Source: Octopus sinensis (taxonomy: Eukaryota). Taken from it: a DNA stretch of 64,000 nucleotides. The stretch covers positions 48,050,001 to 48,114,000 of the forward strand of contig NC_043014.1 of assembly GCF_006345805.1 (NCBI RefSeq). The letters run 5' to 3'. The notes below the pieces were generated by a model, which saw only the letters and a list, made by a program, of their open reading frames with translations, had not been told where the DNA came from and searched no databases. Within the stretch, counting starts at the first letter, position 1. The number at the start of each line of letters is the position of its first letter. The position numbers were made by a program, and so were the translations under genes. Below are positions 12,925 to 64,000 of the stretch, piece after piece.

Positions 12925-13484
12925 AAATTTTAAAAGATGATCGAAGTGAATAAAAATTATAAAAATATATAAGGATATTGTTAATTTACAATATCAGTGG
13001 CTACCATGCATAAAAGAACTATAAAGGCAAAATTATTAATTAATAATGAAGGGTACTACTTGTAGCACCAGCTTGCTAAAAATAGCAGTCAAAATGACTC
13101 AAAACCACAGTTTTCACTTGTACACAAGGGCAAAACTAAGGGAACTGGCCCTTGGTCAGTATTACTCAGACAAGAACAAAGTGATCATTCACAGGGTTCA
13201 AAATAATGGGATTTGGGCATGTTTGATTTTCCTTTTCAATTCTTTGTGTCTATGGTACAGAGTCTTTAAATTTTACTGCTTGTTCCCGCCTGTGGTTTTG
13301 AGTCGTTTTGACTGCTACTTTTAGCAAGCTGATGCTACAAGTAGTACCCTTCATTATTAATTAATAATTTTGCCTTTATGGCTCTTTAATGCATGCTAGC
13401 CACTGATATTATTGTAAATTATTAATAATAATATCCTTATATATTTTTATTATTTTAATTCACTTCGATAATATTTTTAAATTT
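12925..13484. mobile_element. Long-arm fold-back element (about 185-195-bp arms) plus a rearranged partial second copy at 13530-13865
   Basis: Arm 12925-13110 is the reverse complement of 13290-13484; the second copy abuts (TA)n. Confidence 0.7.
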
Positions 13485-13857
13485 GTTGTGGCATGAAAAA
13501 TTATTATTGAGCACATGGACAAAGCGAGCATGGTTTTGGCCCTGGGTCAGTATTACTCACTACAAGAACAAAGTGATCATTCACAAAATTTGAAATCACT
13601 GTGATATGGTTATGTCTGATTTTCATTTTCAGTTCTTTTCATCTATGGTATGGGGTCTTTAAACTTTACTGCTCATTCCTTCAATTTCGCCCTTGTGTAC
13701 AAGTGAAAACTGTGGTTTTGAGTCGTTTTGACTGCTACGTTTAGCATGCTGGTGCTACAAATACTACCCTTCATTATTAATTAATGATTTTGCCTTTATG
13801 GTTTATTTATGCATGCTAGCCACTGATATTATAATAAATTATTAACAATAATAATAT

Positions 13858-13899
<42 letters not shown>

Positions 13900-14417
13900 T
13901 ACAAAATTGACAAAACACCGATGTTTATCACTTCTGAATAGGATCTAATGCAAGTTATTTCACTTGTGCATGACTTTCAAGAGTTTTAATACCAAGCACA
14001 TGAGAATATATTCTTTTTACACCTAGAAGCGCAGCCTACCCACAAACTAGCAAAACACACTTTGTGTATGTGTGTTCAATATTGTTTACATCTCTCGAGG
14101 TGCTTTTAAATCATATTTGAATATTCACTTTGTCCATATATATATATAAATGGTAAGACAACAAAAGAATGAAAGAGACTTCGATATTATGTAAATAGAG
14201 GAATTTATCTGTAAACAATTATTCGGTAGCCATGATAAAACTCAGAGTTTCGGATGTCGGGGTGGAAATCCACACCGCTGTCTGCGTGAATTTCCACCCC
14301 AACATCCAAAACTTGGAGTTTTATCATGGCTACCGAATAATTGTCACATATTACATTTACAGATATATATATATCATATCCATGGTTTTAGCTTGACCAT
14401 TGCTGGAATATATATAT

Positions 14418-14468
<51 letters not shown>

Positions 14469-16348
14469 TTTATATATATACACACACACATATATATATT
14501 GGTGAATGAATAAGTGCATGCATGGATGTGTGGTTTAGAAGATTGCTTCTCAACCATGTGATTTTAGGTTCAGTCTCATTGTATGGCAATTTGGGCGTCT
14601 TCTGCTATAGCCCCAGGTTGAACAAAGCTGTGTGGGCAAATTTGATAGAGAGAAACAAACTCATGTCTTAACACCCCTCACTAATTGTAATCAACGACTT
14701 CGCTACCATACACACAATGATGTTTGTTTGCAGTTTTTCATGAAAACATAGGCGAAGCGGAAAATATTATCATGTGGATATGTCTCCTTGTTTTCCTATT
14801 ACACACTAACTGCAAAACAAGCTTTGCTATCACAAAAGTAGTGGCCTTCGTTTGCAATCTTCCACATAAATAAGTCATACAGCCATCGTAGTGTTTAAAA
14901 AGACCGGGGTGAGTATTATCTTGCTTGTAAACTGACGAGGATTGGCCACAGCAAGAGCATCCGATCATAGAAAATCTGCCATGACAAATTCCGTCAAACG
15001 CGATGATGACATATTCATATAAACGTGTGTGTATGTATGTATGTGTATATATATCGTTTTAGTGTGTACCATCATTATCATTGTCGTTTGAACGTCGGCT
15101 CAGACGAGATATGTTGAGGCAGATCTTCTACATCTTGTTGATCTGTTTCCAAGCAAGAGGATATTTCCCAAAACTCTTTGGACACGAACGGCACAATGGC
15201 CGGTAATGTTTTCGTGAAGGATTTCAAACGGATGATACCACTTGTACGACAGTGACTTTTGTTTACAATTAAAAGTGTGATGTTGAGACAAGGACGTAAC
15301 ACACATAATAGCATTCGTTCGGTTTCCCCTCAAGGCTTTTGTCAGCCCACAGCTAGAGTACAAAACACTTGCTCGACGCGGTCGCCGAGCAGTGTGAATG
15401 AACCCAAATCCGGGATTGCCAAAGGAATTTCTTTACTATACAGTTATTATTATTACTCAGATCTAGGTAATGGAACTCCAGAAAAAGACAACAAACTCCT
15501 GATACAATATTATTTATATTATAAGAATACATAAGTATACACACATTTGTATGAATACGTGTATTCTTATATAAATATCTGAGTGTGTGCGTGTGTATAT
15601 ATATATATATATATATATAGCCAGATAACCGAAGAGATGGTGTTGTGGATTCCCACTTCGGCATCTGAAACTCAGAGTTTTATCTTGACTATCGAGTAAT
15701 TGTAACATATTATTTTACAGATAAATTCCTCTATTTACATAATATTGAGGTCTCTTTCTTTCTTTTGTTATCTTACCGTTTTACCAATATATATATATAC
15801 ATACATATATATATATATATATAAGCATTGTGCTTGTATAGTACCAAATAAATATCGATATATAGATGGGGACAAACCTTCGTTGTTAAACACGTAGTCA
15901 TATGCATATAATAAAAGGCAAAGATAAATAATATCGAGACATAGAGATAGACATTTTTTTTGTTAAATAAAAAGGACATTGAAATAAAGCTGATCTAGGC
16001 AACTTCGTGCGTGGTTGCGAGAGGTGTGGACAGGAAAAACATATTTTGGATTGAATATATTTATCAACTGATACGAAATTTTGAAATTTTGTTTTTACAG
16101 AAATATACATGTCTTTTAAACGATTCGAAAGTGAAATTTTTTTTTTAAATACCTGTAGGATTTTCGAAGATATTTGATGGAAATTTGATCGAGAAATATC
16201 TGAATAAGTTATCAAACGTTGGCACATCGAGTGACAAGAGGTGAAATATAACGATAGGCTTTTTTTTTTTGTTTAGAGGAACTTACGAAGTTTTAGCTTT
16301 AAATAACAACCGTAGAAAGACAAGACATCATTCAGGTGCTGTACTTAC

Positions 16349-30109: not shown

Positions 30110-31265
30110 ATGCTGGAGCACCACCTTTCAGTGTTTTGGAGTCTCCTTTCAGTACTGTTTTTGGTGAAGAAGCAAGTTGGATGAAGCTGCTCTTTGTGCC
30201 TCCTTCCACAGTGTGGGCTCATTTGGGATTTTAGCTAGAAATCTGTCCAGGTGCTTTTTGAATGTTTCTACATCTAAACCTTGCAGATCTCTTAGGTTCC
30301 TTGACAGAATGTTAAATAGTTGTAGTCCCCTGAAACCCAAGCTGTTGCAACACTGGGTCCTTGTCTGAGATGAAGAAGGCGGTATCTTTGGTATTACATA
30401 GTGCCATCCAAGGAGTAGAGTTCCAGTTCTTGTAGTCTCTCCCTGTAGCTCATCTGTTTTACCAAGTCAATCTTCTTTGTGTAGTGGTGCTGGATTGCCT
30501 CAAGTGCTGCCACCAGTTTGACACTCTGTGGCAACTAAAGTTAGGAGCAGGGATCCTGATGACTGAGGACGAATGTCTGACATAGGAGTAGCAAGGTATC
30601 CTTATTTCTGTTTTTGAATGATCTAAGAGTCTATCCTGCCACTCGCCTACACAGAGTTGCCATCCTGGCAATATACACATGGAACGTTGCAGCACTGCTC
30701 ATGTGGATTCCCAGGTCATGCACCGATTCTAGCTCTGGAGTTGTACTGCCCCATGGTCCTATGTATTCCAATTGTAGTCTGTTTTTGTGCTAATAGTGGA
30801 GTGCTTGAAACTTATCAGCATTGAACTGCTTGTTATTTTTATCAGCCCATTTATATATTGCATGTAGGTCATTTTGCAGTTTACTATGTCATCAGGATCC
30901 TTGACTCCTTTAGATACTTTTGTATCATCAGTGTAGCTGATGAGACTGGCTGACTGTATGCCTGACAGCATGTCTGAGAGAGCCACTACAAACAGTAGTG
31001 GTCCCAGTACAGTTCCCTGAGGAACTCTGCTGTGGATTGATGTCTCCCCAGAGAGAGCACCATTGGCTGCAACTGCCTGACTTCTGTCCTTTAAAAAGTT
31101 GTGCAACCATTCTCCCAGTTTTCCAATGATACCAAGGTCATGTAGTTTGTGACATATCATTGCATGATCAACTTTGTCAAAGGCTTTGGCAAAGTTGAGA
31201 TATATCACATTCTGAGTGGTTGAGCTGCTGTTCCAGTACCCAATCATAATGTTGTATCAGGCTCA
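30110..31265 (-). mobile_element. Decayed CR1/L2-group LINE: reverse transcriptase and 3' end
   Basis: ORF 30759-31247 has YLNFAKAFDKVDH...VPQGTVLGPLLF...YTDDTK (RT motifs). Downstream GFRGLQLFNIL...FKKHLDRFL; stops and frameshifts present. Confidence 0.88.
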
Positions 31266-31289: not shown

Positions 31290-31760
31290 ACATGAAATTC
31301 ATCACAATATATTTCAACAATGCGGAAATTTTATTCATCAATGTAAGTACCATTACAATCAACACATGTTTGCAAACAAGTTACAAGTTTATTTATTCTG
31401 GTGACATAAAAATCTGGAGTTCTGGAGCTGATGAACTCTTTGAATGCACTTTCAGCATTGGTTTGATTTTTGAACTCCTTCTCTCTCAGGAAACCATCAA
31501 GGTGCTTGAAAAAGAGGTAGTCAGTTGGAGAAAAATCTGGGTAGGGAAGAACTTCGTAGCCAAGTTTCCTCAACTTCTGGAGCATCATTAGTGAAACGTG
31601 TGGTCAAGCATTGTCATGAAGAATGATTGGCCCTCATCTGTTGACCAGTCTGGGATGGAGGAGTAGCAGTTTGTTGTTCATGATGGCAATTTCATAGCAA
31701 TATATTTCTGCAGTAATGGTTTTTTTCCAGGTTTTAAGAAGTTACCGCCCAACTCCACCC
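31290..31760 (-). mobile_element. Decayed mariner transposase, C-terminal catalytic region
   Basis: GPIILHDNA*PH followed by LQKLRKLGYEVLPYPDFSPTDYLFFKHLDGFL...YVTRINKLV...CVDCNGTYID; HPPYSPDL motif partly deleted. Confidence 0.88.
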
Positions 31761-33914: not shown

Positions 33915-34287
33915 TAGTGGCACGTAAGAGAACCATCCAAACGTGGCCGTTGCCAGCGCCGCCCCGACTGGCCTTGTGCCGGTGACACGTAAAAAGCACC
34001 ATCCGTTCGTGGCCATTGCCAGCCTCGCCTGGCCCCCGTGCCAGTGGCATGTAAAAAGCACCATCTGATCGTGGCCGTTTGCCAGCCTCGTCTGGCACCT
34101 GTGCCGGTGGCACGTAAAAAGCACCCACTACACTCACGGAGTGGTTGGCGTTAGGAAGGGCATCCAGCCGTAGAAACATTGCCAGATCAGACTGGGCCTG
34201 GTGCAGCCTTCTGGCTTCCCAGACCCCAGTTGAACTGTCCAACCCATGCTAGCATGGAAAGCAGACGCTTGATGATGATGATGATGA
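33915..34287 (+). mobile_element. Repeat family C ending gttggcgttaggaagggcatccagc...catgctagcatggaaagcggacgttaaac(GAT)n (RTE-tail-type SINE/LINE 3' end)
   Basis: Many near-identical copies: 1-77, 8370-8703, 48460-48625, 48720-48888, 57405-57665, 58770-59150 (+); 12705-12900, 28385-28570, 29620-29950, 38030-38250, 46303-46560, 48935-49270 (-). Confidence 0.85.
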
Positions 34288-37700: not shown

Positions 37701-38252
37701 CGAGCAAATTGACCCCGGGACTTATTCTTTGTAAGCCCAGTACTTATTCTATCGGTCTCTTTTGCCGAACCGCTAAGTGACGGGGACGTAAACACACACC
37801 AGCATCGGTTGTCAAGCAATGCTAGGGGGACAAACACACACACATATATATATATACATATATACGACGAGCTTCTTTCAGTTCCCGTCTACCAAATCCA
37901 CTCACAAGGCATTGGTCGGCCCAGGGCTATAGCAGAAGACACTTGCCCAAGATGCCACGCAGTGGGATTGAACCCAGAACCATGTGGTTGGTTAGCAAGC
38001 TACTTACCACACAGCCACTCCTATATATATCATCATCATCATCATCGTTTAACGTCCGTTTTCCATGCTAGCATGGGTTGGACGGTTCAACTGGGGTCTG
38101 GGAAGCCAGAAGGCTGCACCAGGCCCAGTCTGATCTTGCGGTGTTTCTACAGCTGGATGCCCTTCCAAATGCCAAACACTCCGTGAGTGTAGTGGGTGCT
38201 TTTTACGTGCCACCGGCACAGGTGCCAGGCGAGGCTCGCAAACGGCCACTAT

Positions 38253-38295
<43 letters not shown>

Positions 38296-38467
38296 AATAT
38301 TAGAGAATAAATCCAAATTTACAGGGAAAAAATCAGATTTAGGATTAAATCCAATTTTATAGTAAAATATTATAAAATATTATTAGAGACAAAACCACTA
38401 TTTTGCAAAACAAACAAGGAAAGACTTAATCAATACATAAAATTTTAATAAATAGTCAAAAAAACCG

Positions 38468-38510
38468 CCACTACAATTGTTTCTTGTCTTGATCGACAAT
38501 CTTCAGGTGG
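38468..38510 (-). ncRNA. Identical minimal type I hammerhead motif in the opposite palindrome arm
   Basis: Exact reverse complement of 43469-43511. Confidence 0.8.
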
Positions 38511-41500
38511 ACTTCCAATCTAAAATATCAATATTTTAAAATATAAAAATAATAATTTTAAAATAATTAAAGTATGAATGAAAAAATGTAAATATATAAT
38601 CCATATATAACCTATATATAATCCATATATAAACAATATATAAACTAAAATAAACCTATCAACAATTAAATATAAAATATAAAACAAAACAAAAAAATAA
38701 TAATACTATAATAATAAACTATATATACACCCATACACATATACCTAATTATATATAACCATATCTAACTACATACACTAAATCACACACCTATATATAT
38801 ATCCCTATACATACACATAAAAACGTCTAGGCAACTATAAATAAATAAAATAGCTAAATACTTCAACACAATACTTATTCATACTCCCACACACACACAC
38901 ACATACAACCCACATTCACGCTCTAGAAAACGGACATCACTTAAAATTATGAACGGAGAAATGGAATAAATGGAATTAAAAATTATATTCACTTGGTAAA
39001 ACTAACACTACTTAAAAATTATGAATGAAACAATGCAATAAAACAACAGACATCACAAATAGACACAAATTACTACGAATTCCTTAACAAACCTACCATG
39101 ATAAACCAAAACTCATAAAAACATATAATGATAAAATCTCCCTTTACTAAACTCTATAACATACCTATATAGCAATCCCCCTAACCTAAACATTCACACA
39201 CAAATACACACACGTAAACCACACACCCACGACATATACAAATACCCACACCACTTACACATACCTATACATACATATAAACCTCAACATATACTCCAAA
39301 AACCCACTCAACCCCACACAGACAAATAAACACAAAAATTATGAATGGATTCTTTTATAAAACTACCATGATAAGCTAAAACTCACAAAACATAAATGAT
39401 AAAACCTCCCTTTACTAAACACTATAACATACTTATATAGGAATCCCTTTAACCTATACATTCACACACAAAAAACACACACGTAAACCACACACCCATA
39501 ACAAATACAAACACCCACCCCACTCACACACACCCACAAGTACATATACGCCTCAACATATACACCAAACAAAATTACTTTACCAAGGAACTTAACATAT
39601 GTATAAAAAGTATAACCGCTCTGGAAACGAACATCTTTTAAAATAATGAATGGAGAAATGGAATAAATGGAATTAAAAATAATATTCACGTGGCAAAACG
39701 AACACCACTCAAAAATTATGAATGAAACAATGTAATAAAACAACCAACATCGAAAATAGACAAATTACCACGAATTCCCTAAAAAAACCATGATAAACCA
39801 AAACTCTTAAAAACATATAACGATAAAATCTCCCTTTGCTAAACTCTATAACAAACCTATATAGCAATCCCCCTAACCTAAACATTCACACACAAAAAAC
39901 ACACACGTAAACCACAGACCCACGACTTATACACATACCTATACTAACTTATAAACCTCAATATACACCAAAACCCACTCCCTCCCCACACAGACAAATT
40001 AACACATACATCCCAAAACCTAAATACAAACCCATATACACATTCACACACAAACACACACACACGCAAAACACACACACACAACAGATACATATACTCC
40101 CTCACATATACGCATATACATACTCACTAAACTCGATATATACAACAATATTTACACACCCACACTCATACAGATAAATAAATTATACAACTAAAAACTC
40201 ACACACAATCTCATATACATAAACACTCCAATAAAAAACACATTAAATACATCGTAATTAACCAGAATATCAAAAATAACAATATGACATAAGGAGAAAT
40301 AAACTACATACTTACAAGTCAGTTTCAAATTATGAAGTGAAATTAAATTCTTAGCCATTAAAAAAATCAAACCAAAATTACGTTACCATAGAAATATAAC
40401 TTATGTAAAAAAAGAATACGCGCCATGGAAAGTAAACGTCATTTAAAATTATGAATGGAGAAATAGAATAAATGGAACTAAAAACTATATCCACGTGGCA
40501 AACCAACACTACTTAAAAAAATTTATTATGAATGGATTCTTTAATAAAACTACCATAATAAATTATTATATACAATTATGAGCTTTAGCTCATCTTAGCA
40601 GCTCTAACAAACAACTTGCAGTAACCCAAATCCATTCTCGAATGAATGAATGGGTGGAGTTGGGAATTGTAACCGGGTGGTGGGCTAGCATTGCTTGGAA
40701 TTGGGAATGGAATAGTGTAGTAGTAAGGCAGGCATCGAGAATGGATTTGGGTTACTGCAAGTTGTTTGTTAGAGCTGCTAAGATGAGCTAAAGCTCATAA
40801 TTGTATATAATAATTTATTATGGTAGTTTTATTAAAGAATCCATTCATAATAAATTTTTTTAAGTAGTGTTGGTTTGCCACGTGGATATAGTTTTTAGTT
40901 CCATTTATTCTATTTCTCCATTCATAATTTTAAATGACGTTTACTTTCCATGGCGCGTATTCTTTTTTTACATAAGTTATATTTCTATGGTAACGTAATT
41001 TTGGTTTGATTTTTTTAATGGCTAAGAATTTAATTTCACTTCATAATTTGAAACTGACTTGTAAGTATGTATACTACTTAAAAAAATTTATTATGAATGG
41101 ATTCTTTAATAAAACTACCATAATAAATTATTATATACAATTATGAGCTTTAGCTCATCTTAGCAGCTCTAACAAACAACTTGCAGTAACCCAAATCCAT
41201 TCTCGAATGAATGAATGGGTGGAGTTGGGATTGTAACCGGTGGTGGGCTAGCATTGCTTGGAATTGGGAATGGAATAGTGTAGTAGTAAGGCAGGCATCG
41301 AGAATGGATTTGGGTTACTGCAAGTTGTTTGTTAGAGCTGCTAAGATGAGCTAAAGCTCATAATTGTATATAATAATTTATTATGGTAGTTTTATTAAAG
41401 AATCCATTCATAATAAATTTTTTTAAGTAGTGTTGGTTTGCCACGTGGATATAGTTTTTAGTTCCATTTATTCTATTTCTCCATTCATAATTTTAAATGA

Positions 41501-43468
41501 CGTTTACTTTCCATGGCGCGTATTCTTTTTTTACATAAGTTATATTTCTATGGTAACGTAATTTTGGTTTGATTTTTTAATGGCTAAGAATTTAATTCAC
41601 TTCATAATTTGAAACTGACTTGTAAGTATGTATTTTATTTCTCCTTATGTCATATTGTTATTTTTGATATTCTGGTTAATTACGATGTATTTAATGTTGT
41701 TTTTTATTGGAGTGTTTATGTATATGAGATTGTGTGTGACTTTTTAGTTGTATAATTTATTTATCTGTATGAGTGTGGGTGTGTAAATATTGTTGTATAT
41801 ATCGAGTTTAGTGAGTATGTATATGCGTATATGTGAGGGAGTATATGTATCTGTGTGTGTGTGTGTTTTGCGTGTGTGTGTGTTTGTGTGTGAATGTGTA
41901 TATGGGTTTGTTATTTAGGTTTTGGGATGTATGTGTTAATTTGTCTGTGTGGGGAGGGAGTGGGTTTTTGGTGTATATTGAGGTTTATAAGTTAGTATAG
42001 GTATGTGTATAAGTCGTGGGTCTGTGGTTTACATGTGTGTTTTTTGTGTGTGAATGTTTAGGTTAGGGGGATTGCTATATAGGTTTGTTATAGAGTTTAG
42101 CAAAGGGAGATTTTATCGTTATATGTTTTTAAGAGATTTGGTTTATCATGGTTTTTTTAGGGAATTCGTGGTAATTTGTCTATTTTCAATGTTGGTTGTT
42201 TTATTACATTGTTTCATTCATAATTTTTGAGTGGTGTTCGTTTTGCCACGTGAATATTATTTTTAATTCCATTTATTCCATTTCTCCATTCATTATTTTA
42301 AAAGATGTTCGTTTCCAGAGCGGTTATACTTTTTATACATATGTTAAGTTCCTTGGTAAAGTAATTTTGTTTGGTGTATATGTTGAGGCGTATATGTACT
42401 TGTGGGTGTGTGTGAGTGGGGTGGGTGTTTGTATTTGTTATGGGTGTGTGGTTTACGTGTGTGTATTTGTGTGTGAATGTATAGGTTAAAGGGATTCCTA
42501 TATAAGTATGTTATAGTGTTTAGTAAAGGGAGGTTTTATCATTTATGTTTTGTGAGTTTTAGCTTATCATGGTAGTTTTATAAAAGAATCCATTCATAAT
42601 TTTTGTGTTTATTTGTCTGTGTGGGGTTGAGTGGGTTTTTGGAGTATATGTTGAGGTTTATATGTATGTATAGGTATGTGTAAGTGGTGTGGGTATTTGT
42701 ATATGTCGTGGGTGTGTGGTTTACGTGGGTGTGTGGTTTACGTGTGTGTATTTGTGTGTGAATGTTTAGGTTAGGGGGATTGCTATATAGGTATGTTATA
42801 GAGTTTAGTAAAGGGAGATTTTATCATTATATGTTTTTATGAGTTTTAGTTTATCATGGTAGGTTTGTTAAGGAATTCGTAGTAATTTGTGTCTATTTGC
42901 GATGTCTGTTGTTTTATTGCATTGTTTCATTCATAATTTTTAAGTAGTGTTAGTTTTACCAAGTGAATATAATTTTTAATTCCATTTATTCCATTTCTCT
43001 CGTTCATAATTTTAAGTGATGTCCGTTTTCTAGAGCGTGAATGTGGGTTGTATGTGTGTGTGTGTGGGAGTATGAATAAGTATTGTGTTGAAGTATTTAG
43101 CTATTTTATTTATTTATAGTTGCCTAGACGTTTTTATGTGTATGTATAGGGATATATATATAGGTGTGTGATTTAGTGTATGTAGTTAGATATGGTTATA
43201 TATAATTAGGTATATGTGTATGGGTGTATATATAGTTTATTATTATATTATTATTATTTTTTTGTTTTGTTTTATATTTTATATTTTATATTTTATATTT
43301 AATTGTTGATAGGTTTATTTTAGTTTATATATTGTTTATATATTGATTATATATGGATTATATATAGGTTATATATGGATTATATATTTACATTTTTTCA
43401 TTCATACTTTAATTATTTTAAAATTATTATTTTTATATTTTAAAATATTGATATTTTAGATTGGAAGT

Positions 43469-43511
43469 CCACCTGAAGATTGTCGATCAAGACAAGAAAC
43501 AATTGTAGTGG
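43469..43511 (+). ncRNA. Minimal type I hammerhead ribozyme motif (Penelope-like element type)
   Basis: CCAC CUGAAGA UUGUC-GAUCAA-GACAA GAAAC AAUU GUA GUGG. Canonical core, stem I 4 bp, stem II 5 bp, stem III AC/GU within palindrome ACAAUUGU, GUA triplet. Confidence 0.8.
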
Positions 43512-43598
43512 CGGTTTTTTTGACTATTTATTAAAATTTTATGTATTGATTAAGTCTTTCCTTGTTTGTTTTGCAAAATAGTGGTTTTGTCTCTAATA

Positions 43599-43655
<57 letters not shown>

Positions 43656-44212
43656 TATATATACACACACACATATACATATATGTATATATCTTATTTT
43701 TTACTTGTTTCAGTCCATGATTGAACAGCATAATGAATTAATGCTCCAATCGGTCAAAACTTTATATCATTCCCAAATTATCAAAAATTGAATATTAATA
43801 TACATTTATATATATTATATATGTATTTTTTTTACTACCCACAAAGGGCTAAACACAGATGGGACAAACGGATTAAGTCGATTACATTTACCCCAGTGCG
43901 TAACTGGTACTTAATTTATCGACCCCGAAAGGATGAAAGGCAAAGTCGACCTTGGCGGAATTTGAACCCAGAACATAACCGCAGATGAAATACGGCTACG
44001 CATTTCGTCCGGCGTGCTAACATTTCTGCCAGCTCACCGCCTTACACACTGCCTTATATATATTATATATGGAACGTTTATTCATTATACCTTTCAGTTA
44101 TTTCTCCTTTCACCTCGGTGTCACCTGAGCACTTCCAGCTGTTGTCCTATTTTCATTTTTGTTCTGTGGTTCAACAACGTTATAAAATCATCCTCTTATA
44201 TATGTATGTATG

Positions 44213-44250
<38 letters not shown>

Positions 44251-44637
44251 ATACATATATAGGATAGCCAATATTCGTTAGAAATATCACCACCAGTGGC
44301 TTAGCATGTATAAATAGTCAATAGACAACATATTCTTACTTTAAAAATAGTGTACGTTTAAACACAAAAGAAAACTACCCTTTAACAAGTAATTTTTACA
44401 TGCTAGAAGAAGCAGCCAAAATGGCCAAAACCACAGTTTAATAGCAATTTTTGAAGGAAATGAAAAATAAAAGCTTTTACTTTAAAAAAAAGATAAAAGT
44501 TTTTATTTTTCATTTCCTTAGAAAATTGCTATTAAATTGTGGTTTTGGCCATTTTGGCTGCTTCTTCTAGCATGTAAAAATTACCTGTTAAAGGGTAGTT
44601 TTCTTTTGTGTTTAATGTACACTATTTTAAAAATAAG

Positions 44638-44725
<88 letters not shown>

Positions 44726-44822: not shown

Positions 44823-44931
44823 GGTGAATGAACTTGAAACCAGTTTGATGGAGATGTGTGACTTTGGAACGGTGAGAAATATATGCCGAGGACGCCCTGT
44901 ACCTGCACACTTGAGACCTGAAGTATGGCAG
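44823..44931 (+). CDS. TBC1D23: TBC1D23 exon 2 (VNELETSLMEMCDFGTVRNICRGRPVPAHLRPEVWQ)
   Basis: ttctAG| ... |GTTAGT. Resembles TBC1D23 '[25 protein letters not shown]' as recalled. Confidence 0.93.
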
Positions 44932-46029: not shown

Positions 46030-46085
46030 ACATACACACACACAGATATTGCTTTTGTGTATCTACTGAACATTTTCAATTGCAG

Positions 46086-46191
46086 ATTTGTCTGAATATT
46101 CAAGGCCGAGGAGATGCAATGGCTACATTTGATGGTTTATATGACATGGACGAACAGACACAGTTGAGAGAAGACTGCACAGCTCTTGTTG
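46086..46191 (+). CDS. TBC1D23: TBC1D23 exon 3 (ICLNIQGRGDAMATFDGLYDMDEQTQLREDCTALV)
   Basis: ttgcAG| ... |GTGAGT; 106 nt, phase 0 to 1; frame-compatible with both neighbours. Confidence 0.93.
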
Positions 46192-47374: not shown

Positions 47375-47706
47375 TTGTTGTGTCTGGGGAGAGTCATTTT
47401 CTTTTTGTGCCTTATAATGTAACACACTCACCGGTAAAATTTCCACTTATTTCTTATTTTTATTTTCCTAAAAATTTTCGTTGTGTCTTGCAACCTTTTC
47501 GATAGTTTTGAAGATTTCCACTTTTATCTTCCTAAAATTTTCGTTGCGTCTTGCAACCTTTTCAATAGTTTTGACTCTCAAAACTATTGAAAAGGTTGCA
47601 AGACGCAACAAAAATTTTAGGAAGATAAGAAAAAAGTGGAAATTTTACCAGTGAGTGTCTTATGTTATAAGGCACAAAATGGAAATGACTCCCCCCAGAC
47701 ACAACA
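47375..47706. repeat. Fold-back element with three copies of a motif of about 45 nt (two tandem on minus, one on plus)
   Basis: Symmetry centre ttttga-ctc-tcaaaa at 47576; outer arms tgtctggggagagtcatttt / aaatgactccccccagacaca. Confidence 0.8.
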
Positions 47707-47786
47707 GAATATGCTTCAACACACAAACTCATATAAAGAATCTTATACACCAAATCCAAAAATGAAATGTTTATTGTGTATTTCAG

Positions 47787-47991
47787 ATAAACTGGGCAAC
47801 GAAGAAGACGACCGTGTCTCCATTGTCAGCGACTTGGAATCTATTTTCACATTTTACAGCAAATCTAAGAATGAATCTTATATCCCTGATAATGGCTGGT
47901 TGGAAGTGATTCAACCTTTATTAGCCATGAAATACAACAGGATAGAACTTTACAACAGTTTCTACACTGTTGTTAACAGATACTTGCCAAA
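47787..47991 (+). CDS. TBC1D23: TBC1D23 exon 4 (DKLGNEEDDRVSIVSDLESIFTFYSKSK...ELYNSFYTVVNRYLPK)
   Basis: tttcAG| ... |GTATGT; 205 nt. Matches the TBC1D23 'DIESVITFYCKS...LYNCFYAIMNKYIP' segment as recalled. Confidence 0.95.
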
Positions 47992-48883: not shown

Positions 48884-48924
<41 letters not shown>

Positions 48925-49850
48925 TATATATATATCATCATCATCATCGTTTAACATCCGGTTTACCATGCTAGCATGGGTTGGACGGTTCAACCGGGGT
49001 CTGGGAAGCCAAGGAGGCTGCACCAGGCTCCAGTCTGATCTGGCAGTGTTTCTACAGCTGGATGCCCTTCCTAATGCCAACCACTCCATGAGTGTAGTGG
49101 GTGCTTTTTACGTGCCACTGGCACAGGGGCCAGAGGAAGCTGGCAAATGGCCACGATCAGTTGGTGCTTTTACGTGTCACCGACACGGACGCCAGTCAGG
49201 AGGCACTAGCATCTGCCACGTTCGGATGGTGCTTTTAACATGTCACCGGCACGGGTATCTTAACTACAATTTCCATTTGATTTTCATTTTGATGTTGGTG
49301 TTAACATACTTGACTCAATAGGTATATATATAGATAGATATATTGATATGCACATATATATAGATTGTGCATAATTTTTGTACTAGTCACTAGTGTTATA
49401 AATTGTGAATTGTGATCCATCAAAAGCCAAAGGTTTTTCATGTTATTGAATTGTGGGGTAGAGGTTAATGAGCATGCATGCTTTTCCAAAGGGTATAAGT
49501 GTAAGAAGGACCCACAATGAGGAACCAAACCCAATTCATCAAGAGCTTACCACCCACCTCTCCCATTATGCACCAACACATAATATGTAAGAAACATGGT
49601 GTGATTTTTGTTGGAGCAAAAAATTAAGAATTTTGACTTAAAGCATTTACAACTTGAACAAAAGAATGGAATCGTTAGCACCCTGTATGCATGGGGCTAA
49701 TTATCTTTTGTGTAAAATCCCAGCTTCCTTGAATTTCATACTGGTTCAGTAAAAAATATTGCTTTTGAAATGTTAAGTTGATATATGTTTTTGTATATAT
49801 GTACATTCATGTGTGTGTGTATTATACATGCATATATGTGTACATGTATA

Positions 49851-51129: not shown

Positions 51130-51842
51130 TTTGAGGAATGGCTCCCACACAATAGTGATTCCTCAAGTGCTTTGCTTGTTATATCCAGAAATAGCTCTGA
51201 AGAGAGTAGCATTCATTTTCTTAGGTCATTCAATTTGCCTCCATCGATCAATAAACCAGTTCATCTTTGGTGTTACAAGGAGTTTTGTTGGTCTCTTGCT
51301 AAACTGCGTCCCACACCTAATAATCAAGGGGTTTGAGTCTGGCGAGTTAGGGGTGATGTGGTTGCAGAAATTGTCTGACAGCCATGACTGGGTTCTCCTG
51401 CTTGCGTGGCATAGTGCAGAGTCCTGTTGCCAGACATCGGGTCTTCCAGCAGCCAGCCTCTTGACCCAGAGCAGCACTACCTCCTCCAGGCACTTGATGT
51501 AGACCTCCATGTTGAGGCATAATGTCGCCATCACTAGTGATCACACCAAACACCATGATGTCAACTGGATGTTTGATTTTTATCACTCTTGGTATATGTC
51601 CTCAGATTGACACCCAAACACTCTGAAATGTTTGTATTGGAGCTTCCAGCACAAATGCCAAGCAGTACAGCATGTTTCCAAATTTGTGGCAGAGTGAATT
51701 GCATCATGGTGCTGTTTTTCTCACAGATGGTGCCCAACTGACCCTACTATACTGTGTAGTCGACAAAATTGAAAACAAACAATTCACATGCATGAAATTA
51801 AAAATATAAAATGGCAAGAATTTTTACCCATTACACCCTGTA
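51130..51842 (-). mobile_element. Decayed Tc1/mariner (maT/DD37D-like) fragment with one TIR
   Basis: HPVDIMVFGVITSDG and VWQQDSALCH...PNSPDSNPL motifs; TA|CAGGGTG terminus at 51834-51842 (minus). Confidence 0.75.
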
Positions 51843-56912: not shown

Positions 56913-58419
56913 GTCAGTATTGATCTTTATATTGATTATTGTTGTTGTATTAAAGAAAAAAAAATCATTGAGGAATATGGAGTGATGTTGACTTTGTGAG
57001 TGTCCGTGTGCTGTGTAGCAGCAACACTGTCCCAGATACGTTTTATCTTTTACTTGTTTCAGTCATTAGACTGCGGCTATGCTGAGGCATCGCCTTGAAA
57101 AGCTTTTAGTCAAAGAAATCAACCACAGTGATTTTTTAAAGCCCGGTACTTATCCTATCAGTTGTTTTGCCAAACTGCTAAGTTACAGGGATGTAAACAA
57201 ACCAACACCAGCTGTCAGGTGGTGGCGGGTGACAAACATAGACACAAAGACACACACACGCATACACACATGTGTATAGTAGGCTTCTTTCAGTTTTTGT
57301 CTACCAAATCCACTCATAAGGCTTTGGTCAGCCTGAGACTATAGTAGAAGACACTTGCTCAAGGTGTCACTCAGTGGGATTGAACCTTGTTTGTCCCTCT
57401 ATATTTAGCCCCTTGTGTCGGTGGCACATTAAAAGCTCCAACCGATCGTGACCGATGCCGGACCCCCCTGGCACCTGTGCCGGTGGCACGTAAAAAGCAC
57501 CCACTACACTCGCGGAGTGGTTGGCGTTAGGAAGGACATCCAGCTGTAGAAACTCTGCCAGATCAGACTGGAGCCTGGTGCAGCCCCTGGCTTCCCAGAC
57601 CCCGGTCGAACCGTCCAACCCGTGCTAGAACAGAAAACGGACGTTAAACGAAGATGATGATGATGATATAAAATCATGACAAAACTCACACATGTTGTAG
57701 TCCTTAAGATGAATAATTTTGGTAAAATCTCCAGTTTTCTTTTTTGTGCTGTTCAGTGTTGCATTAAAAAAAAAAAAAACCAATGATGTAAGGGGAGGTA
57801 AACAAACCTGAACTATTCACCAAATGAGGCAATACGTCTCTCACTGATGTTACTTCATCTTTTGTGAAAGCAACCCAGTGAGTTGCTCACAGTGGAAGTG
57901 GTAAATCCATCCTAACACTACTAATCCAACATCTGGCAGCTGACTTGGCAGACACCCGTAAAATTATTAACCATCTTACAAACAATAACTCTGAGCACCT
58001 TTTCAAACTCCACCCGTCTAACACCCATGGACATGTTTACAAAGTCAGAAAACTCCCATGACTTTCGAAAACATTTTTTCACACCAAGAGTTTTTGATGC
58101 ATGGAACAAACTGCTGGCATCAGTTGTTAGTTGTCGGAGCACTGCATCCTTCAAAACTTCCATGCTTCCTGAGATTCGCCAACACTACACCTGATTTTCT
58201 CCCCTCCATATTACTGCAAGCATGTATCTGACTTATACACTGTTCTCTTCCCAGACATTTGTATATTACTGCATATACTTTATATGCACTTTCTGACAAG
58301 TTGTGGTGCACCTGAGCACTGTATACAATAATTTCATTATTATTATTATTATAATTCAGTCTCCTTGCCACTAGTCTAGTGTTTCTATTTCAGTTGAAAA
58401 TCTCTCCTATTATTTCCAG

Positions 58420-59922: not shown

Positions 59923-60225
<303 letters not shown>

Positions 60226-61071: not shown

Positions 61072-61745
61072 GTACACAGGTCGAACTACATTGAAGGCTG
61101 TGAGCTAGCAGAATCGTTAGCACACTGGACAAAATACTTGGCAGGATTTTGCCTGTAGCTACGTTCTGAGTTCAAAATCTGCCGAGATCGACTTTGCCTT
61201 TCATCCTTTTGGGGTTGATAAAATAAGTACCAGTTGAACACTGGGGTCGATGTAATCGACTCATCCCAAGCTGCCCTTGTGGCAAAAATCTGAAATAATA
61301 GAGTGCACAGGTCACAATTGGTCCAGTGTACTTTAAGATGGGCCAGAGAGGTTGAATGGTAAGTTTGGTGGCAAGGAGGAGAGTGAAAGTAGCACTGTTG
61401 GTTCGGTCTGTACCAGTTAATAGTTGGTCAGGAAAGTGCAGTGGTATGTTTAGTTACACTGCAAGTAATGCATGGCTGATAGATACATTGCTGATTTTTT
61501 AGTCCCCCTGCAACAGCATAGGACAGTAAAATTGAGAAGTGGAGGGAGTGATTAAGAGATGAGCAATACAGGCATAGGTCAGGAAGGTATGAAGATTAAA
61601 GGTACGGCTGACTGAAATATAGGTGATATAGGAGTGAGAAGAGGGAGGTGGGCAACTAGCGGCAGCAATAGGGTAAGTAAAAAGGGTTAATAAGTGGGAG
61701 AGAGGCTATCAAAGTGGTTAATGATGTTACAGAATATATATATAT

Positions 61746-61794
<49 letters not shown>

Positions 61795-62064
61795 ATTGAT
61801 AAAACGTAAGATAACAAAAGAAAGAAAGAGACCTCAATATTATGTAAATAGAGGAAATTTATCTATACAATATGTTACATTACTCGGTAGTCAAGATAAA
61901 ACTCTGAGTTTCAGATGCCGAAGTGGAAATCCACAACACCATCTCTTCGGTTATCTGGAAAATAGCCAGATAACCGAAGAGATGGTGTTGTGGATTTCCA
62001 CTTCGGCATCTGAAACTCAGAGTTTTATCTTGACTACCGAGTAATGTAACATATTGTATAGATA
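61795..62064. mobile_element. Short (TA)n-associated hammerhead-like element as head-to-head dimer; relatives at 14148-14360 and 15620-15790
   Basis: 99-bp arms (61860-61958 / 61966-62064) with a 7-nt spacer. Shares the tail 'gataacaaaagaaagaaagagacctcaatattatgtaaatagagg' with the other two copies. Confidence 0.75.
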
Positions 62065-62344
62065 TATTATATATATATATATATATACCACCATGCTGAA
62101 AATAGCAGTCAAAACTTGACTCTAAAGCCACATTAAATGTTCATATAGCACTAGGAGAAAAGACAGAGAAACAAAATAAAATAGCAAAAAAAGAATTTAC
62201 TGGATAATTCCAAATCCTGGATTTCTGGCTTTGCATAAAAGATGCTCTGCCTTTGTCAGTGGAATTTTTTAATAATTATTACCCTTGAAAGGTTTTTATT
62301 CCCATGCTGGCCACTTGATAAGATCGATACTTAAATATTGATCT

Positions 62345-64000
62345 TATCCTTATTTATATATATATGTATATATATGTGTGTATATATATATATGTGTGTA
62401 TATATATATATGTGTGTATATATATATATATGTGTGTATATATATATATGTGTGTGTATATATATATGTGTGTGTATATATATATATATGTGTGTATATA
62501 TATATATGTGTGTATATATATATGTGTGTATATATATGTGTGTATATATATGTGTATATATATGTGTGTATATGTGTATGTATATATATGTGTATGTATA
62601 TATATGTGTATATATATGTATATATATATATGTGTATATATATGTATATATATATATATGTGTATATATGTATATATATATATATATGTGTATATATATG
62701 TATATATATATGTGTGTGTATATATGTATATATATATGTGTGTATATATGTATATATATATGTGTGTATATATGTATATATATATGTGTGTATATATGTA
62801 TATATATATGTGTGTATATATGTATATATATATGTGTATATATATGTGTATATATGTGTATGTATATATATGTGTATATATGTGTATGTATATATATGTG
62901 TGTATATATATGTGTGTATATATGTGTGTGTATATATGTGTATATATGTGTATGTATATATATGTGTGTATATATATGTGTGTATATATGTGTGTATATA
63001 TATGTGTATATATATATATGTGTATATATATATGTGTATATATATATGTATATATATATGTGTATATATATATGTATATATATATATGTGTATATATGTA
63101 TATATATATATGTGTATATATGTATATATATATATGTGTATATATGTATATATATATGTGTATATATAATATATATGTATATATGTATATATATATATGT
63201 GTATATATGTATATATATATATGTGTGTATATATGTATATATATATGTGTGTATATATGTATTATATATGTGTGTATATATGTATATATATATATGTTGT
63301 ATATATGTATATATAATGTGTATATATGTATATATATGTGTGTATATATGTATATATATATATGCGTGTATATATGTATATATATATGCGTGTATATATG
63401 TATATATATATGTGTGTATATATGTATATATATATATGCGTGTATATATGTATATATATATGCGTGTATATATGTATATATATATGCGTATATATATGTA
63501 TATATATATGTGTGTATATATATGTATATATATATGTGTATATATATGTATATATATGTGTGTATATATATGTATATATATGTGTGTTATATATATATAT
63601 ATTGTGTATATATATGTATATATATGTGTGTATATATATGTATATATGTGTGTATTATATGTATATATATATATGTATATATATATATATGTGTATATAT
63701 ATGTATATATATATATGTGTATATATATGTATATATATATGTATATATATAATGTGTATATATATGTATATATATGTGTATATATATGTATATATATATA
63801 TTGTATATATGTATATATATATATGTGTATATATATGTAATATATATATATGTATATATATATAATGTGTATATATATGTATATATATGTATATATATAT
63901 GTGTTATATATATGTATATATATATATGTGTATATATATGTATATATATATATGTGTATATATATGTATATATATATATGTGTATATATATGTATATATA
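62345..64000. repeat. Compound (TA)/(TG) microsatellite, at least 1.65 kb, running off the window end
   Basis: Almost only T, A and G on the plus strand in tatatatgtg-type units. It produces the spurious 500-aa Y/I/C/V/M ORFs. Confidence 0.97.

What the first reader, a model, noticed from the sequence alone, without database searches (positions are those of the whole stretch)
38371..43608. 5.2-kb near-perfect palindrome with about 2.3-kb arms inside TBC1D23 intron 1
Seen: left arm 38371-40641 and right arm 41298-43608 are reverse complements with few differences (coordinate sum 81979 at both the outer ends and the hammerheads). The arms are strongly strand-skewed: A/C-rich and G-poor on the left, T/G-rich on the right. 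They contain three diverged internal repeats (aaaattatgaa(c/t)ggagaaatggaataaatggaa at about 38945, 39640, 40445), and a G-rich apex of about 92 nt. Inference: transcription of the host gene would give a dsRNA stem of more than 2 kb ending 1.2 kb before exon 2. This is a potential ADAR substrate (coleoids are known for extensive A-to-I editing), a possible siRNA source and a cruciform-prone site. High arm identity suggests recent origin or gene conversion.
Basis: partly seen in the sequence, partly recalled or inferred. Interest (0 to 1): 0.7.

Follow-up and report, generated by a model that had tools for sequence, protein, structure and literature searches.

The report
Giant intronic hairpin repeat in octopus TBC1D23
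A non-coding 5.2-kb stretch whose two halves are near-perfect mirror-image complements really does sit in an intron of the TBC1D23 gene, wedged into a TA microsatellite; it is most likely a young foldback-type repeat that would form very long double-stranded RNA if transcribed, and its kind is already known.

Summary
The palindrome is real in the sequence. The left arm (38371-40641) and right arm (41298-43608) match at 2256 of 2265 aligned bases (99.6%), with 12 indel events. Eight of those are one-base A-run differences.

The centre is not a simple 92-nt apex. A 565-bp hairpin tip is duplicated in tandem, which gives a T-shaped fold. Rfam finds no hammerhead or any other RNA family, and the arms hit no Pfam family.

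The arms are G-poor (6.3% G). They carry three diverged internal units and have no other copy in the window. The element is bounded by (TA)n arrays on both sides, with a 78-bp unpaired spacer on the left only. Two smaller hairpin repeats in the same window show the same layout, and both belong to multi-copy families.

The host gene is a TBC1D23 orthologue on the + strand (PDB 6jl7, E=1e-50). The next exon starts 1215 nt downstream. Exon 1 was not located, so "intron 1" is unverified.

Best reading: a young foldback-type repeat, either a mobile element or an in-situ fold-back duplication, that forms dsRNA only as a passive by-product. ADAR editing is plausible but untested. An siRNA role is unlikely, because molluscs lack a dedicated endo-siRNA pathway. 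An assembly artefact is not excluded, especially for the duplicated tip.

The parts
38256..38292 (.). Left (TA)n array. It follows directly on a truncated SINE-like repeat copy (about 38021-38257).
   Evidence: TRF, period 2, 23 copies. The SINE copies align up to 38253-38257.
38293..38370 (+). 78-bp unpaired spacer (X1) between the left (TA)n and the palindrome. It has no counterpart at the right end and resembles the arm terminus only weakly.
   Evidence: Sequence. Local alignment against the arm terminus scores 44, against 32.6 +/- 4.6 for shuffles, p about 0.02.
38371..40641 (+). Left arm, 2271 nt, A/C-rich and G-poor (6.3% G). It contains three diverged complex units and CA/TA-type simple sequence.
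38919..39246 (+). Internal unit copy 1, containing the 33-nt motif at 38943.
   Evidence: 89% identical to 39617-39939. Motif hit.
39617..39939 (+). Internal unit copy 2, with the motif at 39640.
40368..40519 (+). Internal unit copy 3 (partial), with the motif at 40445.
   Evidence: 82% identical to 39566-39715. Motif hit.
40642..40734 (+). Apex 1, a 93-nt G-rich loop (37 G of 93).
40735..41071 (+). Inverted copy of 40305-40641, 337 nt and 100% complementary. Together with apex 1 it forms the first hairpin tip.
   Evidence: I2.
41073..41206 (+). Second direct copy of 40508-40641. This is the start of the second copy of the 565-bp tandem duplication.
   Evidence: Copy 2 differs from copy 1 only by 4 one-base homopolymer contractions.
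41207..41297 (+). Apex 2, 91 nt. It equals apex 1 minus two homopolymer bases.
41298..43608 (+). Right arm, 2311 nt, T/G-rich and C-poor. It is the reverse complement of the left arm.
43605..43692 (.). Right (TA)n array, directly abutting the right arm. It shares 3 nt of ATA/TAT microhomology with the arm end.
   Evidence: TRF, period 2, 44.5 copies. Sequence.
44823..44931 (+). Next downstream exon of the TBC1D23 orthologue. The 3' splice site is ttctag|G and the donor is cag|gttagt.

Best explanation
This is a genuine, evolutionarily young, non-coding long inverted repeat of the foldback class. It is most likely a non-autonomous foldback-like (very long TIR) mobile element lodged in a (TA)n microsatellite, in the intron upstream of the first recognisable coding exon of TBC1D23.

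Each arm is old, G-poor, cryptically simple CA/TA-type sequence interspersed with three diverged units of about 700-800 bp. The inversion that paired the arms is much younger than those internal repeats. The hairpin tip has since been duplicated in tandem, or was mis-assembled.

The element has no function of its own. As a by-product, TBC1D23 pre-mRNA that runs through it would fold into about 2.4 kb of almost perfect, A:U-rich duplex. In a coleoid, the likely fate of that duplex is promiscuous ADAR hyper-editing in the nucleus, followed by decay with the intron, not siRNA production.

Shown: the structure, composition, flanks, host gene and predicted fold. Inferred: mobility, transcription and editing.
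For: - Arms are 99.6% complementary over 2.27 kb.
- Arms differ in the copy number of 11-, 14- and 17-nt tandem units, and they contain larger sub-repeats. Foldback-element arms behave this way.
- The ORFs in the arms have no Pfam hit. There is no Rfam family and no tRNA.
- The element is bounded by (TA)n arrays on both sides. Such arrays cover only 2.7% of the window.
- The same layout, (TA)n, then a 64-78-bp spacer, then a palindrome, then (TA)n, recurs at 44197-44722 and at 61734-62087. Both of those belong to repeat families with further copies in the window. Hairpin repeats bounded by TA arrays are therefore a recurrent, heritable repeat type in this genome.
- The flanks are collinear with the host gene. 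A SINE-like copy lies to the left, and unique sequence to the right runs on to a TBC1D23 exon. This argues against a simple fold-back read artefact.
- Predicted RNA fold: MFE -4017 kcal/mol against about -1046 for shuffles.
- 93.5% of the adenosines in the left arm lack a 5' G, the neighbour that ADAR disfavours (the preference itself is from established knowledge).
- Molluscs lack a dedicated endo-siRNA pathway.
Against: - There is no second copy of the arm sequence in the 64-kb window.
- No octopus DNA could be reached in any collection, so mobility is untested.
- No target-site duplication can be read, because both flanks are (TA)n.
- The ends are asymmetric: the 78-bp spacer is on the left only.
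- No transposase is present.
- The missing part of the left-flank SINE copy is not found on the other side, so no empty site can be rebuilt.
- Transcription and editing were not observed.
- The differences between the arms are dominated by homopolymer-length changes. That pattern looks like unpolished long-read consensus, so the exact divergence and the tip duplication are uncertain.
Confidence: 0.42

Rival explanations
1. In-situ inverted duplication. The ancestral intron carried (TA)n, X1, one arm, the apex, then (TA)n. A break or stalled fork at the fragile, hairpin-prone right (TA)n let the 3' end fold back near the apex and copy the arm in reverse. Synthesis then rejoined the (TA)n by TA microhomology. 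No transposition is involved. The dsRNA consequences are the same as in the best explanation.
For: - Asymmetry: the left arm runs on into 78 bp with no counterpart on the right.
- The right arm stops exactly at the (TA)n, with 3 nt of ATA/TAT microhomology.
- The arms are nearly identical although the internal repeats are old.
- A further replication-type rearrangement, the 565-bp tandem tip duplication with a 1-nt junction, sits at the centre.
- The arm is single-copy within the window.
Against: In the small U-family hairpins, two separate copies (14146-14352 and 61797-62063) share the same asymmetric boundaries. Such asymmetry can therefore be inherited and is not made anew each time. This model also treats the (TA)n on the left as coincidence. 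The window alone gives no direct test.
Confidence: 0.3
2. Assembly artefact. Either the second arm, or at least the duplicated 565-bp tip, was created by chimeric fold-back long reads or by mis-joining of a palindromic centre. The real locus would then have one arm, or a simple palindrome with a single tip.
For: - The two tip copies differ only by four one-base homopolymer contractions and no substitution.
- 8 of the 12 indels between the arms are one-base A-run differences. This is the error profile of long-read consensus in a region where short reads cannot be placed uniquely.
- The apex is an odd G-rich sequence with no relatives.
Against: - A fold-back read should continue beyond the second arm as the reverse complement of the first flank (X1, (TA)n, SINE). 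Here the right arm ends at a (TA)n and runs into unique sequence and the next TBC1D23 exon.
- The arms also differ by 9 substitutions and by whole 11-, 14- and 17-nt repeat units, which is unexpected if both came from one molecule.
- Smaller, older hairpins with the same layout exist nearby.
Confidence: 0.13
3. A selected, functional hairpin locus. Examples would be an hpRNA-like small-RNA gene, or an ADAR- or dsRNA-binding-protein sink that tunes editing or TBC1D23 splicing.
For: The duplex is very long, nearly perfect and A:U-rich, in a favourable ADAR context. It sits 1.2 kb upstream of a splice acceptor.
Against: There is no evidence of conservation. The arms are low-complexity sequence with no similarity to any gene in the window. 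Molluscs lack the Dicer-2/siAGO pathway and detectable endo-siRNAs. Near-identity of the arms is explained by youth alone.
Confidence: 0.05

Closest known systems
Foldback (FB-type) transposable elements (Drosophila FB, sea-urchin TU, nematode Tm1 Mutator/Foldback; PMC3169594, PMC4079207 listed)
   Same: Almost the whole element consists of two long inverted arms. The arms contain tandem sub-repeats whose copy number differs between them. The middle is short and non-coding, and there are no ORFs.
   Different: Copy number and mobility are unknown. No target-site duplication can be read. The sub-repeats are large (270-800 bp) and diverged, not short and regular. The left end has an unpaired 78-bp segment. 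The arms are strongly G-poor.
TA-microsatellite-targeting elements (MuTAnT Mutator-like elements of Medicago, PMC4486113; rice Micron, from my own knowledge)
   Same: The element is flanked by (TA)n arrays on both sides, as are the other hairpin repeats in this window.
   Different: Those are plant families with defined TIRs and 9-bp TSDs. No sequence relationship, TSD or transposase is shown here. The TA arrays might also have grown out of TA-rich element ends.
Intronic inverted repeat pairs that form ADAR-edited dsRNA (for example inverted Alu pairs; repeat-derived editing across metazoans including O. bimaculoides, PMC9989829)
   Same: Intramolecular pairing of inverted copies within one transcription unit. 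Promiscuous hyper-editing of a long duplex is the expected outcome.
   Different: The duplex is about ten times longer and far more perfect than a typical repeat pair. It is one element and not two independent insertions. Editing was not observed here.
Drosophila hpRNA loci (endo-siRNA-producing hairpins)
   Same: A long hairpin with internally repeated arms.
   Different: The pathway that processes them (Dicer-2/AGO2) is reported absent from molluscs. No target-gene homology was found.
Fold-back inversions / palindromic duplications seeded at fragile AT-rich repeats (yeast and cancer genomes, human PATRRs; from my own knowledge)
   Same: A large palindrome with a short asymmetric centre, a junction in an AT-dinucleotide repeat with microhomology, and a secondary rearrangement at the centre.
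   Different: In PATRRs the AT-rich repeat is itself the palindrome. Here the (TA)n lies at the outer ends and not at the centre. This is a germ-line, interstitial, 5-kb event.

Membership tests
Foldback-type transposable element | Two long inverted arms make up nearly the whole element, with a short non-coding middle | tested here: met
   Arms of 2271 and 2311 nt at 99.6% identity, with 656 nt between them (93 nt if the tip duplication is discounted). The arm ORFs have no Pfam hit.
Foldback-type transposable element | Arms built of tandem sub-repeats, with copy number variable between arms | tested here: met
   Internal units are 82-89% identical. There are 11-, 17- and 22-nt tandem units. 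The arms differ by whole 11-, 14- and 17-nt units. However, the units are large and diverged, not short and regular.
Foldback-type transposable element | Target-site duplication flanking the element | tested here: inconclusive
   Both flanks are (TA)n, so any TA-composed duplication is hidden. The left end also has a 78-bp unpaired segment.
Foldback-type transposable element | Multiple dispersed copies, or presence/absence polymorphism (mobility) | not testable with these tools
   There is no other copy in the 64-kb window. No cephalopod DNA could be reached in the collections.
ADAR hyper-editing substrate | A long intramolecular duplex within one transcription unit | tested here: met
   Predicted stem of 1921 bp plus tips of 340 and 140 bp, MFE -4017 kcal/mol. 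The host gene is on the + strand and an exon lies downstream. Transcription itself is assumed.
ADAR hyper-editing substrate | Clusters of A-to-G mismatches between RNA and DNA | not testable with these tools
   No RNA-seq data were available.
hpRNA / endo-siRNA locus | Processing by a dedicated Dicer-2/siAGO pathway into 21-22-nt duplexes | not testable with these tools
   No small-RNA data were available. The literature reports that the pathway and its products are absent in molluscs, including O. bimaculoides (PMC11114477, PMC12479628), which argues against membership.
   No family reaches its gathering score in the whole window. At E up to 10 in 38000-44000 there are only TA-repeat look-alikes of miRNA families.
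Fold-back chimeric-read assembly artefact | Beyond the second arm, the sequence continues as the reverse complement of the first flank | tested here: not met
   The right arm ends at a (TA)n, followed by unique sequence, other repeats and the next TBC1D23 exon.
Fold-back chimeric-read assembly artefact | The copies differ only by sequencing-type errors | tested here: inconclusive
   For the tip duplication this holds: only 4 homopolymer contractions. For the arms it does not fully hold: 8 homopolymer indels, but also 9 substitutions and 3 repeat-unit indels.
Deaminase-hypermutated (G-to-A / C-to-T) repeat copy | A strand-specific excess of one transition, and recognisable parents under a three-letter alphabet | tested here: not met
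   Differences among the internal repeats are A/G 20 against C/T 47 on the G-poor strand. Three-letter BLAST against the rest of the window gives no hit.

The most novel reading that the evidence does not exclude
Hairpin elements bounded by TA microsatellites could be a distinct, recurrent class in octopus genomes. They might be made or spread by a mechanism tied to (TA)n arrays. This 5.3-kb member has an arm that is 48% A and almost free of G, so it offers about a thousand adenosines in the context ADAR prefers. It could then act as a nuclear ADAR/dsRNA-binding sink, or as an editing-dependent modulator of TBC1D23 intron processing.
Probability: 0.06. Interest if true: 0.65.

Novelty: new member of a known kind. 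Interest (0 to 1): 0.3.

Why it matters
If the structure is real and transcribed, it is one of the longest near-perfect intramolecular dsRNAs one could expect in an animal pre-mRNA, in a lineage known for very heavy A-to-I editing. It would be a convenient natural probe for three questions. How do coleoid ADARs handle kilobase-long perfect duplexes? What happens to long dsRNA in an animal without a dedicated siRNA pathway? How stable are kilobase palindromes next to fragile (TA)n tracts?

The kind of object is not new. Long inverted repeats, foldback elements and intronic dsRNA-forming repeat pairs are all known. Nothing here shows a function. The practical value is mainly as a flag for assembly validation, and as one example of the hairpin repeats bounded by TA arrays that recur in this window.

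Tried and rejected
- Hammerhead or other structured RNA: Rfam finds nothing at gathering scores or at E up to 10 apart from TA-repeat noise. ARAGORN finds no tRNA.
- Protein-coding arms: the longest arm ORF (97 aa) has no Pfam hit and the arm ORFs are low-complexity.
- Deaminase or RIP-like hypermutation as the cause of G-poverty: differences among the internal repeats are not biased towards G/A. C-to-T, G-to-A, A-to-G and T-to-C three-letter BLAST against the rest of the window gives no hit.
- RNA-edited retro-copy: the nine arm-to-arm substitutions show no A/G excess.
- Other copies elsewhere. All of these came back empty:
  - BLAST within the window.
  - The protein database, which holds only one distant TBC1D23-like fragment and no octopus proteins.
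  - Exact-ORF look-ups for arm ORFs and a host-gene ORF.
  - Two metagenome pattern scans.
  - The plasmid collection, checked for vector or contaminant.
- Shared origin of the three spacers X1, X2 and X3: they show no similarity to each other.
- Rebuilding an empty site from the truncated SINE-like copy on the left: its continuation is not on the right side.
- Locating exon 1 or a CpG island, to verify 'intron 1': no candidate was found.
- Literature on octopus foldback or palindromic repeats: nothing specific was found.
Full report

Yes. The repeat finder reports a chain of inverted segments joining 38371-40641 to 41298-43608. A global alignment of the left arm with the reverse complement of the right arm gives 2256 matches, 9 mismatches and 52 gap columns in 12 indel events, which is 99.6% identity over aligned bases.

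Composition mirrors across the centre. The left arm is A 47.6%, C 22.7%, G 6.3%, T 23.4%, and the right arm is A 23.6%, C 6.3%, G 22.4%, T 47.7%. Mirror copies lie on the other strand, against 0 expected by chance.

As RNA, 38371-43608 has a predicted MFE of -4017 kcal/mol. Three shuffles give about -1046, and a neighbouring 5.2-kb stretch gives -1808.

**2. Corrections to the description**

- The inner ends sum to 81939, not 81979, because the arms differ by a net 40 nt.
- The arms are separated by 656 nt, not by a single apex of about 92 nt.
- The hairpin tip is duplicated in tandem:
  - Copy 1 is 40508-41072: 134 nt of arm, then a 93-nt G-rich apex (40642-40734), then a 337-nt perfect inverted copy of 40305-40641.
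  - Copy 2 is 41073-41633: the same 134 nt, then a 91-nt apex (41207-41297), then the start of the right arm.
- The two copies differ only by four one-base homopolymer contractions and by no substitution.
- The predicted fold is therefore T-shaped: a 1921-bp stem carrying a 340-bp hairpin and a 140-bp hairpin.
- There is no hammerhead ribozyme or any other Rfam family and no tRNA.

**3. Anatomy of an arm**

Each arm contains three diverged copies of a complex unit. 38919-39246 is 89% identical to 39617-39939, and 40368-40519 is 82% identical to 39566-39715. A 250-nt sub-repeat is also present, with 39055-39300 84% identical to 39322-39569. Small tandem units of 11, 17 and 22 nt occur as well.

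Most G residues sit in the complex units. The stretches between them are CA/TA-type cryptically simple sequence, including a G-free run of 236 nt.

I tested whether the G-poverty reflects strand-specific deamination. It does not look like it:
- Differences among the internal repeats are A/G 20 against C/T 47 on the G-poor strand.
- A three-letter-alphabet BLAST finds no parent sequence elsewhere in the window.

The skew switch at the centre is simply what inverting a skewed sequence produces. The longest arm ORF (97 aa) has no Pfam hit, and the arm ORFs are low-complexity.

**4. Surroundings**

The host gene is a TBC1D23 orthologue on the + strand. Concatenated exon peptides match PDB 6jl7 (TBC1 domain family member 23) at E = 1.2e-50. 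A downstream exon carries a rhodanese signature.

The next exon is 44823-44931. It has a good polypyrimidine/AG acceptor and an in-frame stop just upstream, so an upstream exon is required. The palindrome ends 1215 nt before it. The 1.1 kb in between is almost entirely repeats, so the missing upstream exon most probably lies to the left of the palindrome. I could not locate that exon, however, and 'intron 1' remains unverified.

On the left, a SINE-like copy (at least 12 relatives in the window) is cut off at 38253-38257 by a (TA)n array at 38256-38292. A 78-bp unpaired spacer (X1) follows, and then the palindrome. On the right, the arm runs straight into a (TA)n array at 43605-43692, sharing 3 nt (ATA/TAT) with it. 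The rest of the SINE-like copy is not on the right side, so no empty site can be rebuilt.

**5. The same layout recurs in the window**

(TA)n arrays cover only 2.7% of the window. Even so, two smaller hairpin repeats have the layout of (TA)n, then a 64-78-bp spacer, then a palindrome, then (TA)n:
- Palindrome 44330-44643, with (TA)n at 44197-44261 and 44640-44722.
- Palindrome about 61861-62063, with (TA)n at 61734-61796 and 62062-87.

Both belong to families with further copies in the window. The second ('U') family recurs at 14146-14352 as a hairpin with the same asymmetric boundaries. It also recurs at 15621-15783 as a monomer. Both copies are again bounded by (TA)n. The first is related to a MITE-like cluster at 12986-13834, whose right end also abuts a (TA)n.

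The three spacers are unrelated to each other in sequence. So hairpin repeats bounded by TA arrays are a heritable repeat type in this genome, and the finding looks like a giant example. This is an argument by analogy. The arm itself has no second copy in the window, and no cephalopod DNA was reachable elsewhere.

**6. What it most likely is**

I favour a real, young, non-coding long inverted repeat of the foldback class. Its origin is unresolved between two options:

(a) A non-autonomous foldback-like mobile element lodged in a TA microsatellite. The points in favour are:
- TA arrays on both sides.
- Arms that contain sub-repeats.
- Unequal sub-repeat numbers between the arms.
- The multi-copy hairpin families with the same layout.

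(b) An in-situ fold-back or template-switch duplication that rejoined at the fragile (TA)n. The points in favour are:
- The asymmetry at the left end.
- The TA microhomology at the right junction.
- The arm being single-copy within the window.

I put these at roughly 0.42 and 0.30.

The arms are 99.6% identical whereas the internal repeats are only 82-89% identical. The inversion, or the last gene conversion between the arms, is therefore much younger than the arm sequence itself.

**7. Artefact risk**

A simple fold-back chimeric read is unlikely. Beyond the right arm the sequence does not continue as the reverse complement of the left flank. It runs into unique sequence and the next exon of the same gene. 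The arms also differ by 9 substitutions and by whole 11-, 14- and 17-nt units.

On the other hand, 8 of the 12 arm indels are one-base A-run differences, and so are all 4 differences between the tip copies. This is the signature of long-read consensus that short reads could not polish. The true arm divergence may therefore be lower than measured, and the 565-bp tip duplication in particular needs read-level confirmation. I give about 0.13 to the second arm or the duplicated tip being an assembly artefact. The duplicated tip is the less secure of the two.

**8. How it would work**

If the intron is transcribed, the RNA should snap into about 2.4 kb of nearly perfect, A:U-rich duplex containing only 22 G:U pairs.

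ADAR hyper-editing is the expected fate. Repeat-derived intramolecular duplexes are the main ADAR substrates across metazoans, octopus included (PMC9989829). In addition, 93.5% of the left-arm adenosines lack the disfavoured 5' G. This remains inference, because no RNA data were available.

Two surveys find no Dicer-2/siAGO genes and no endo-siRNA signature in molluscs, including O. bimaculoides (PMC11114477, PMC12479628).

Cruciform or hairpin formation in DNA is plausible. The rearranged centre is the kind of secondary change expected at an unstable palindrome, but that too is inference.

**9. Novelty and score**

Long inverted repeats, foldback elements, elements bounded by TA microsatellites, and intronic dsRNA-forming repeats are all known kinds. 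I found no report of such elements in octopus repeat annotations. This is therefore a new member of a known kind. It is notable for its size and perfection, and for the organism's editing biology, but no function has been demonstrated. Interest 0.3.

Noticed in passing
window 44197-44722: A 314-bp hairpin (palindrome 44330-44643; core arms 44358-44479 and 44494-44615 are 96% complementary). It has an imperfect (TA)n and a 68-bp spacer on the left, and (AT)41 directly on the right. This is the same layout as the finding. The spacer and arms resemble the MITE-like repeat at 12986-13834.
   Followed up: partly
window 61734-62087; 14136-14374; 15596-15823: The 'U' repeat family has about 60 nt of unique head plus a hairpin with arms of about 100 nt. 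It occurs twice as a hairpin (61797-62063 and 14146-14352, with the same asymmetric boundaries) and once as a monomer lacking the second arm (15621-15783). Every copy is bounded by (TA)n arrays.
   Followed up: partly
window 12986-13896: A cluster of three copies of a 120-160-nt TIR-like unit (12986-13144 on +, 13290-13410 on -, 13676-13834 on -; 90-94% identical). Its right end abuts (TA)18. A related fragment lies at 62087-62132.
   Followed up: partly
window 40508-41633: A tandem duplication of the 565-bp hairpin tip. The copies differ only by four one-base homopolymer contractions. It is either a very recent rearrangement of the palindrome centre or an assembly error.
   Followed up: yes
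window 38021-38257 and at least 12 other places (e.g. 34063-34287, 48924-49158, 57467-57670): An abundant SINE-like repeat, 81-92% identical between copies, with 3' sub-repeats of about 62 bp. The copy next to the palindrome is cut off at the (TA)n. A second abundant repeat (43863-44051, about 20 copies) lies to the right of the palindrome.
   Followed up: partly
window 62300-64000: A TA/TG-rich satellite-like tract with a C-free run of 1015 nt and GC skew up to +0.93. It gives only low-complexity matches to 38592-38819 of the left arm.
   Followed up: no
window 30759-31247 (-); 31331-31588 (-); 51226-51534 (-): A reverse-transcriptase fragment (Pfam RVT_1, E=1.2e-13) and two ORFs that look, from my own knowledge, like Tc1/mariner transposase remnants. 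Neither of the two has a Pfam hit at E up to 0.1.
   Followed up: no
window 60010-60150 (+), 47700-47950 (+), 46040-46150 (+): Further TBC1D23 exons: TBC-domain pieces and the rhodanese motif '[10 protein letters not shown]'. They show that the gene runs left to right across the window.
   Followed up: partly
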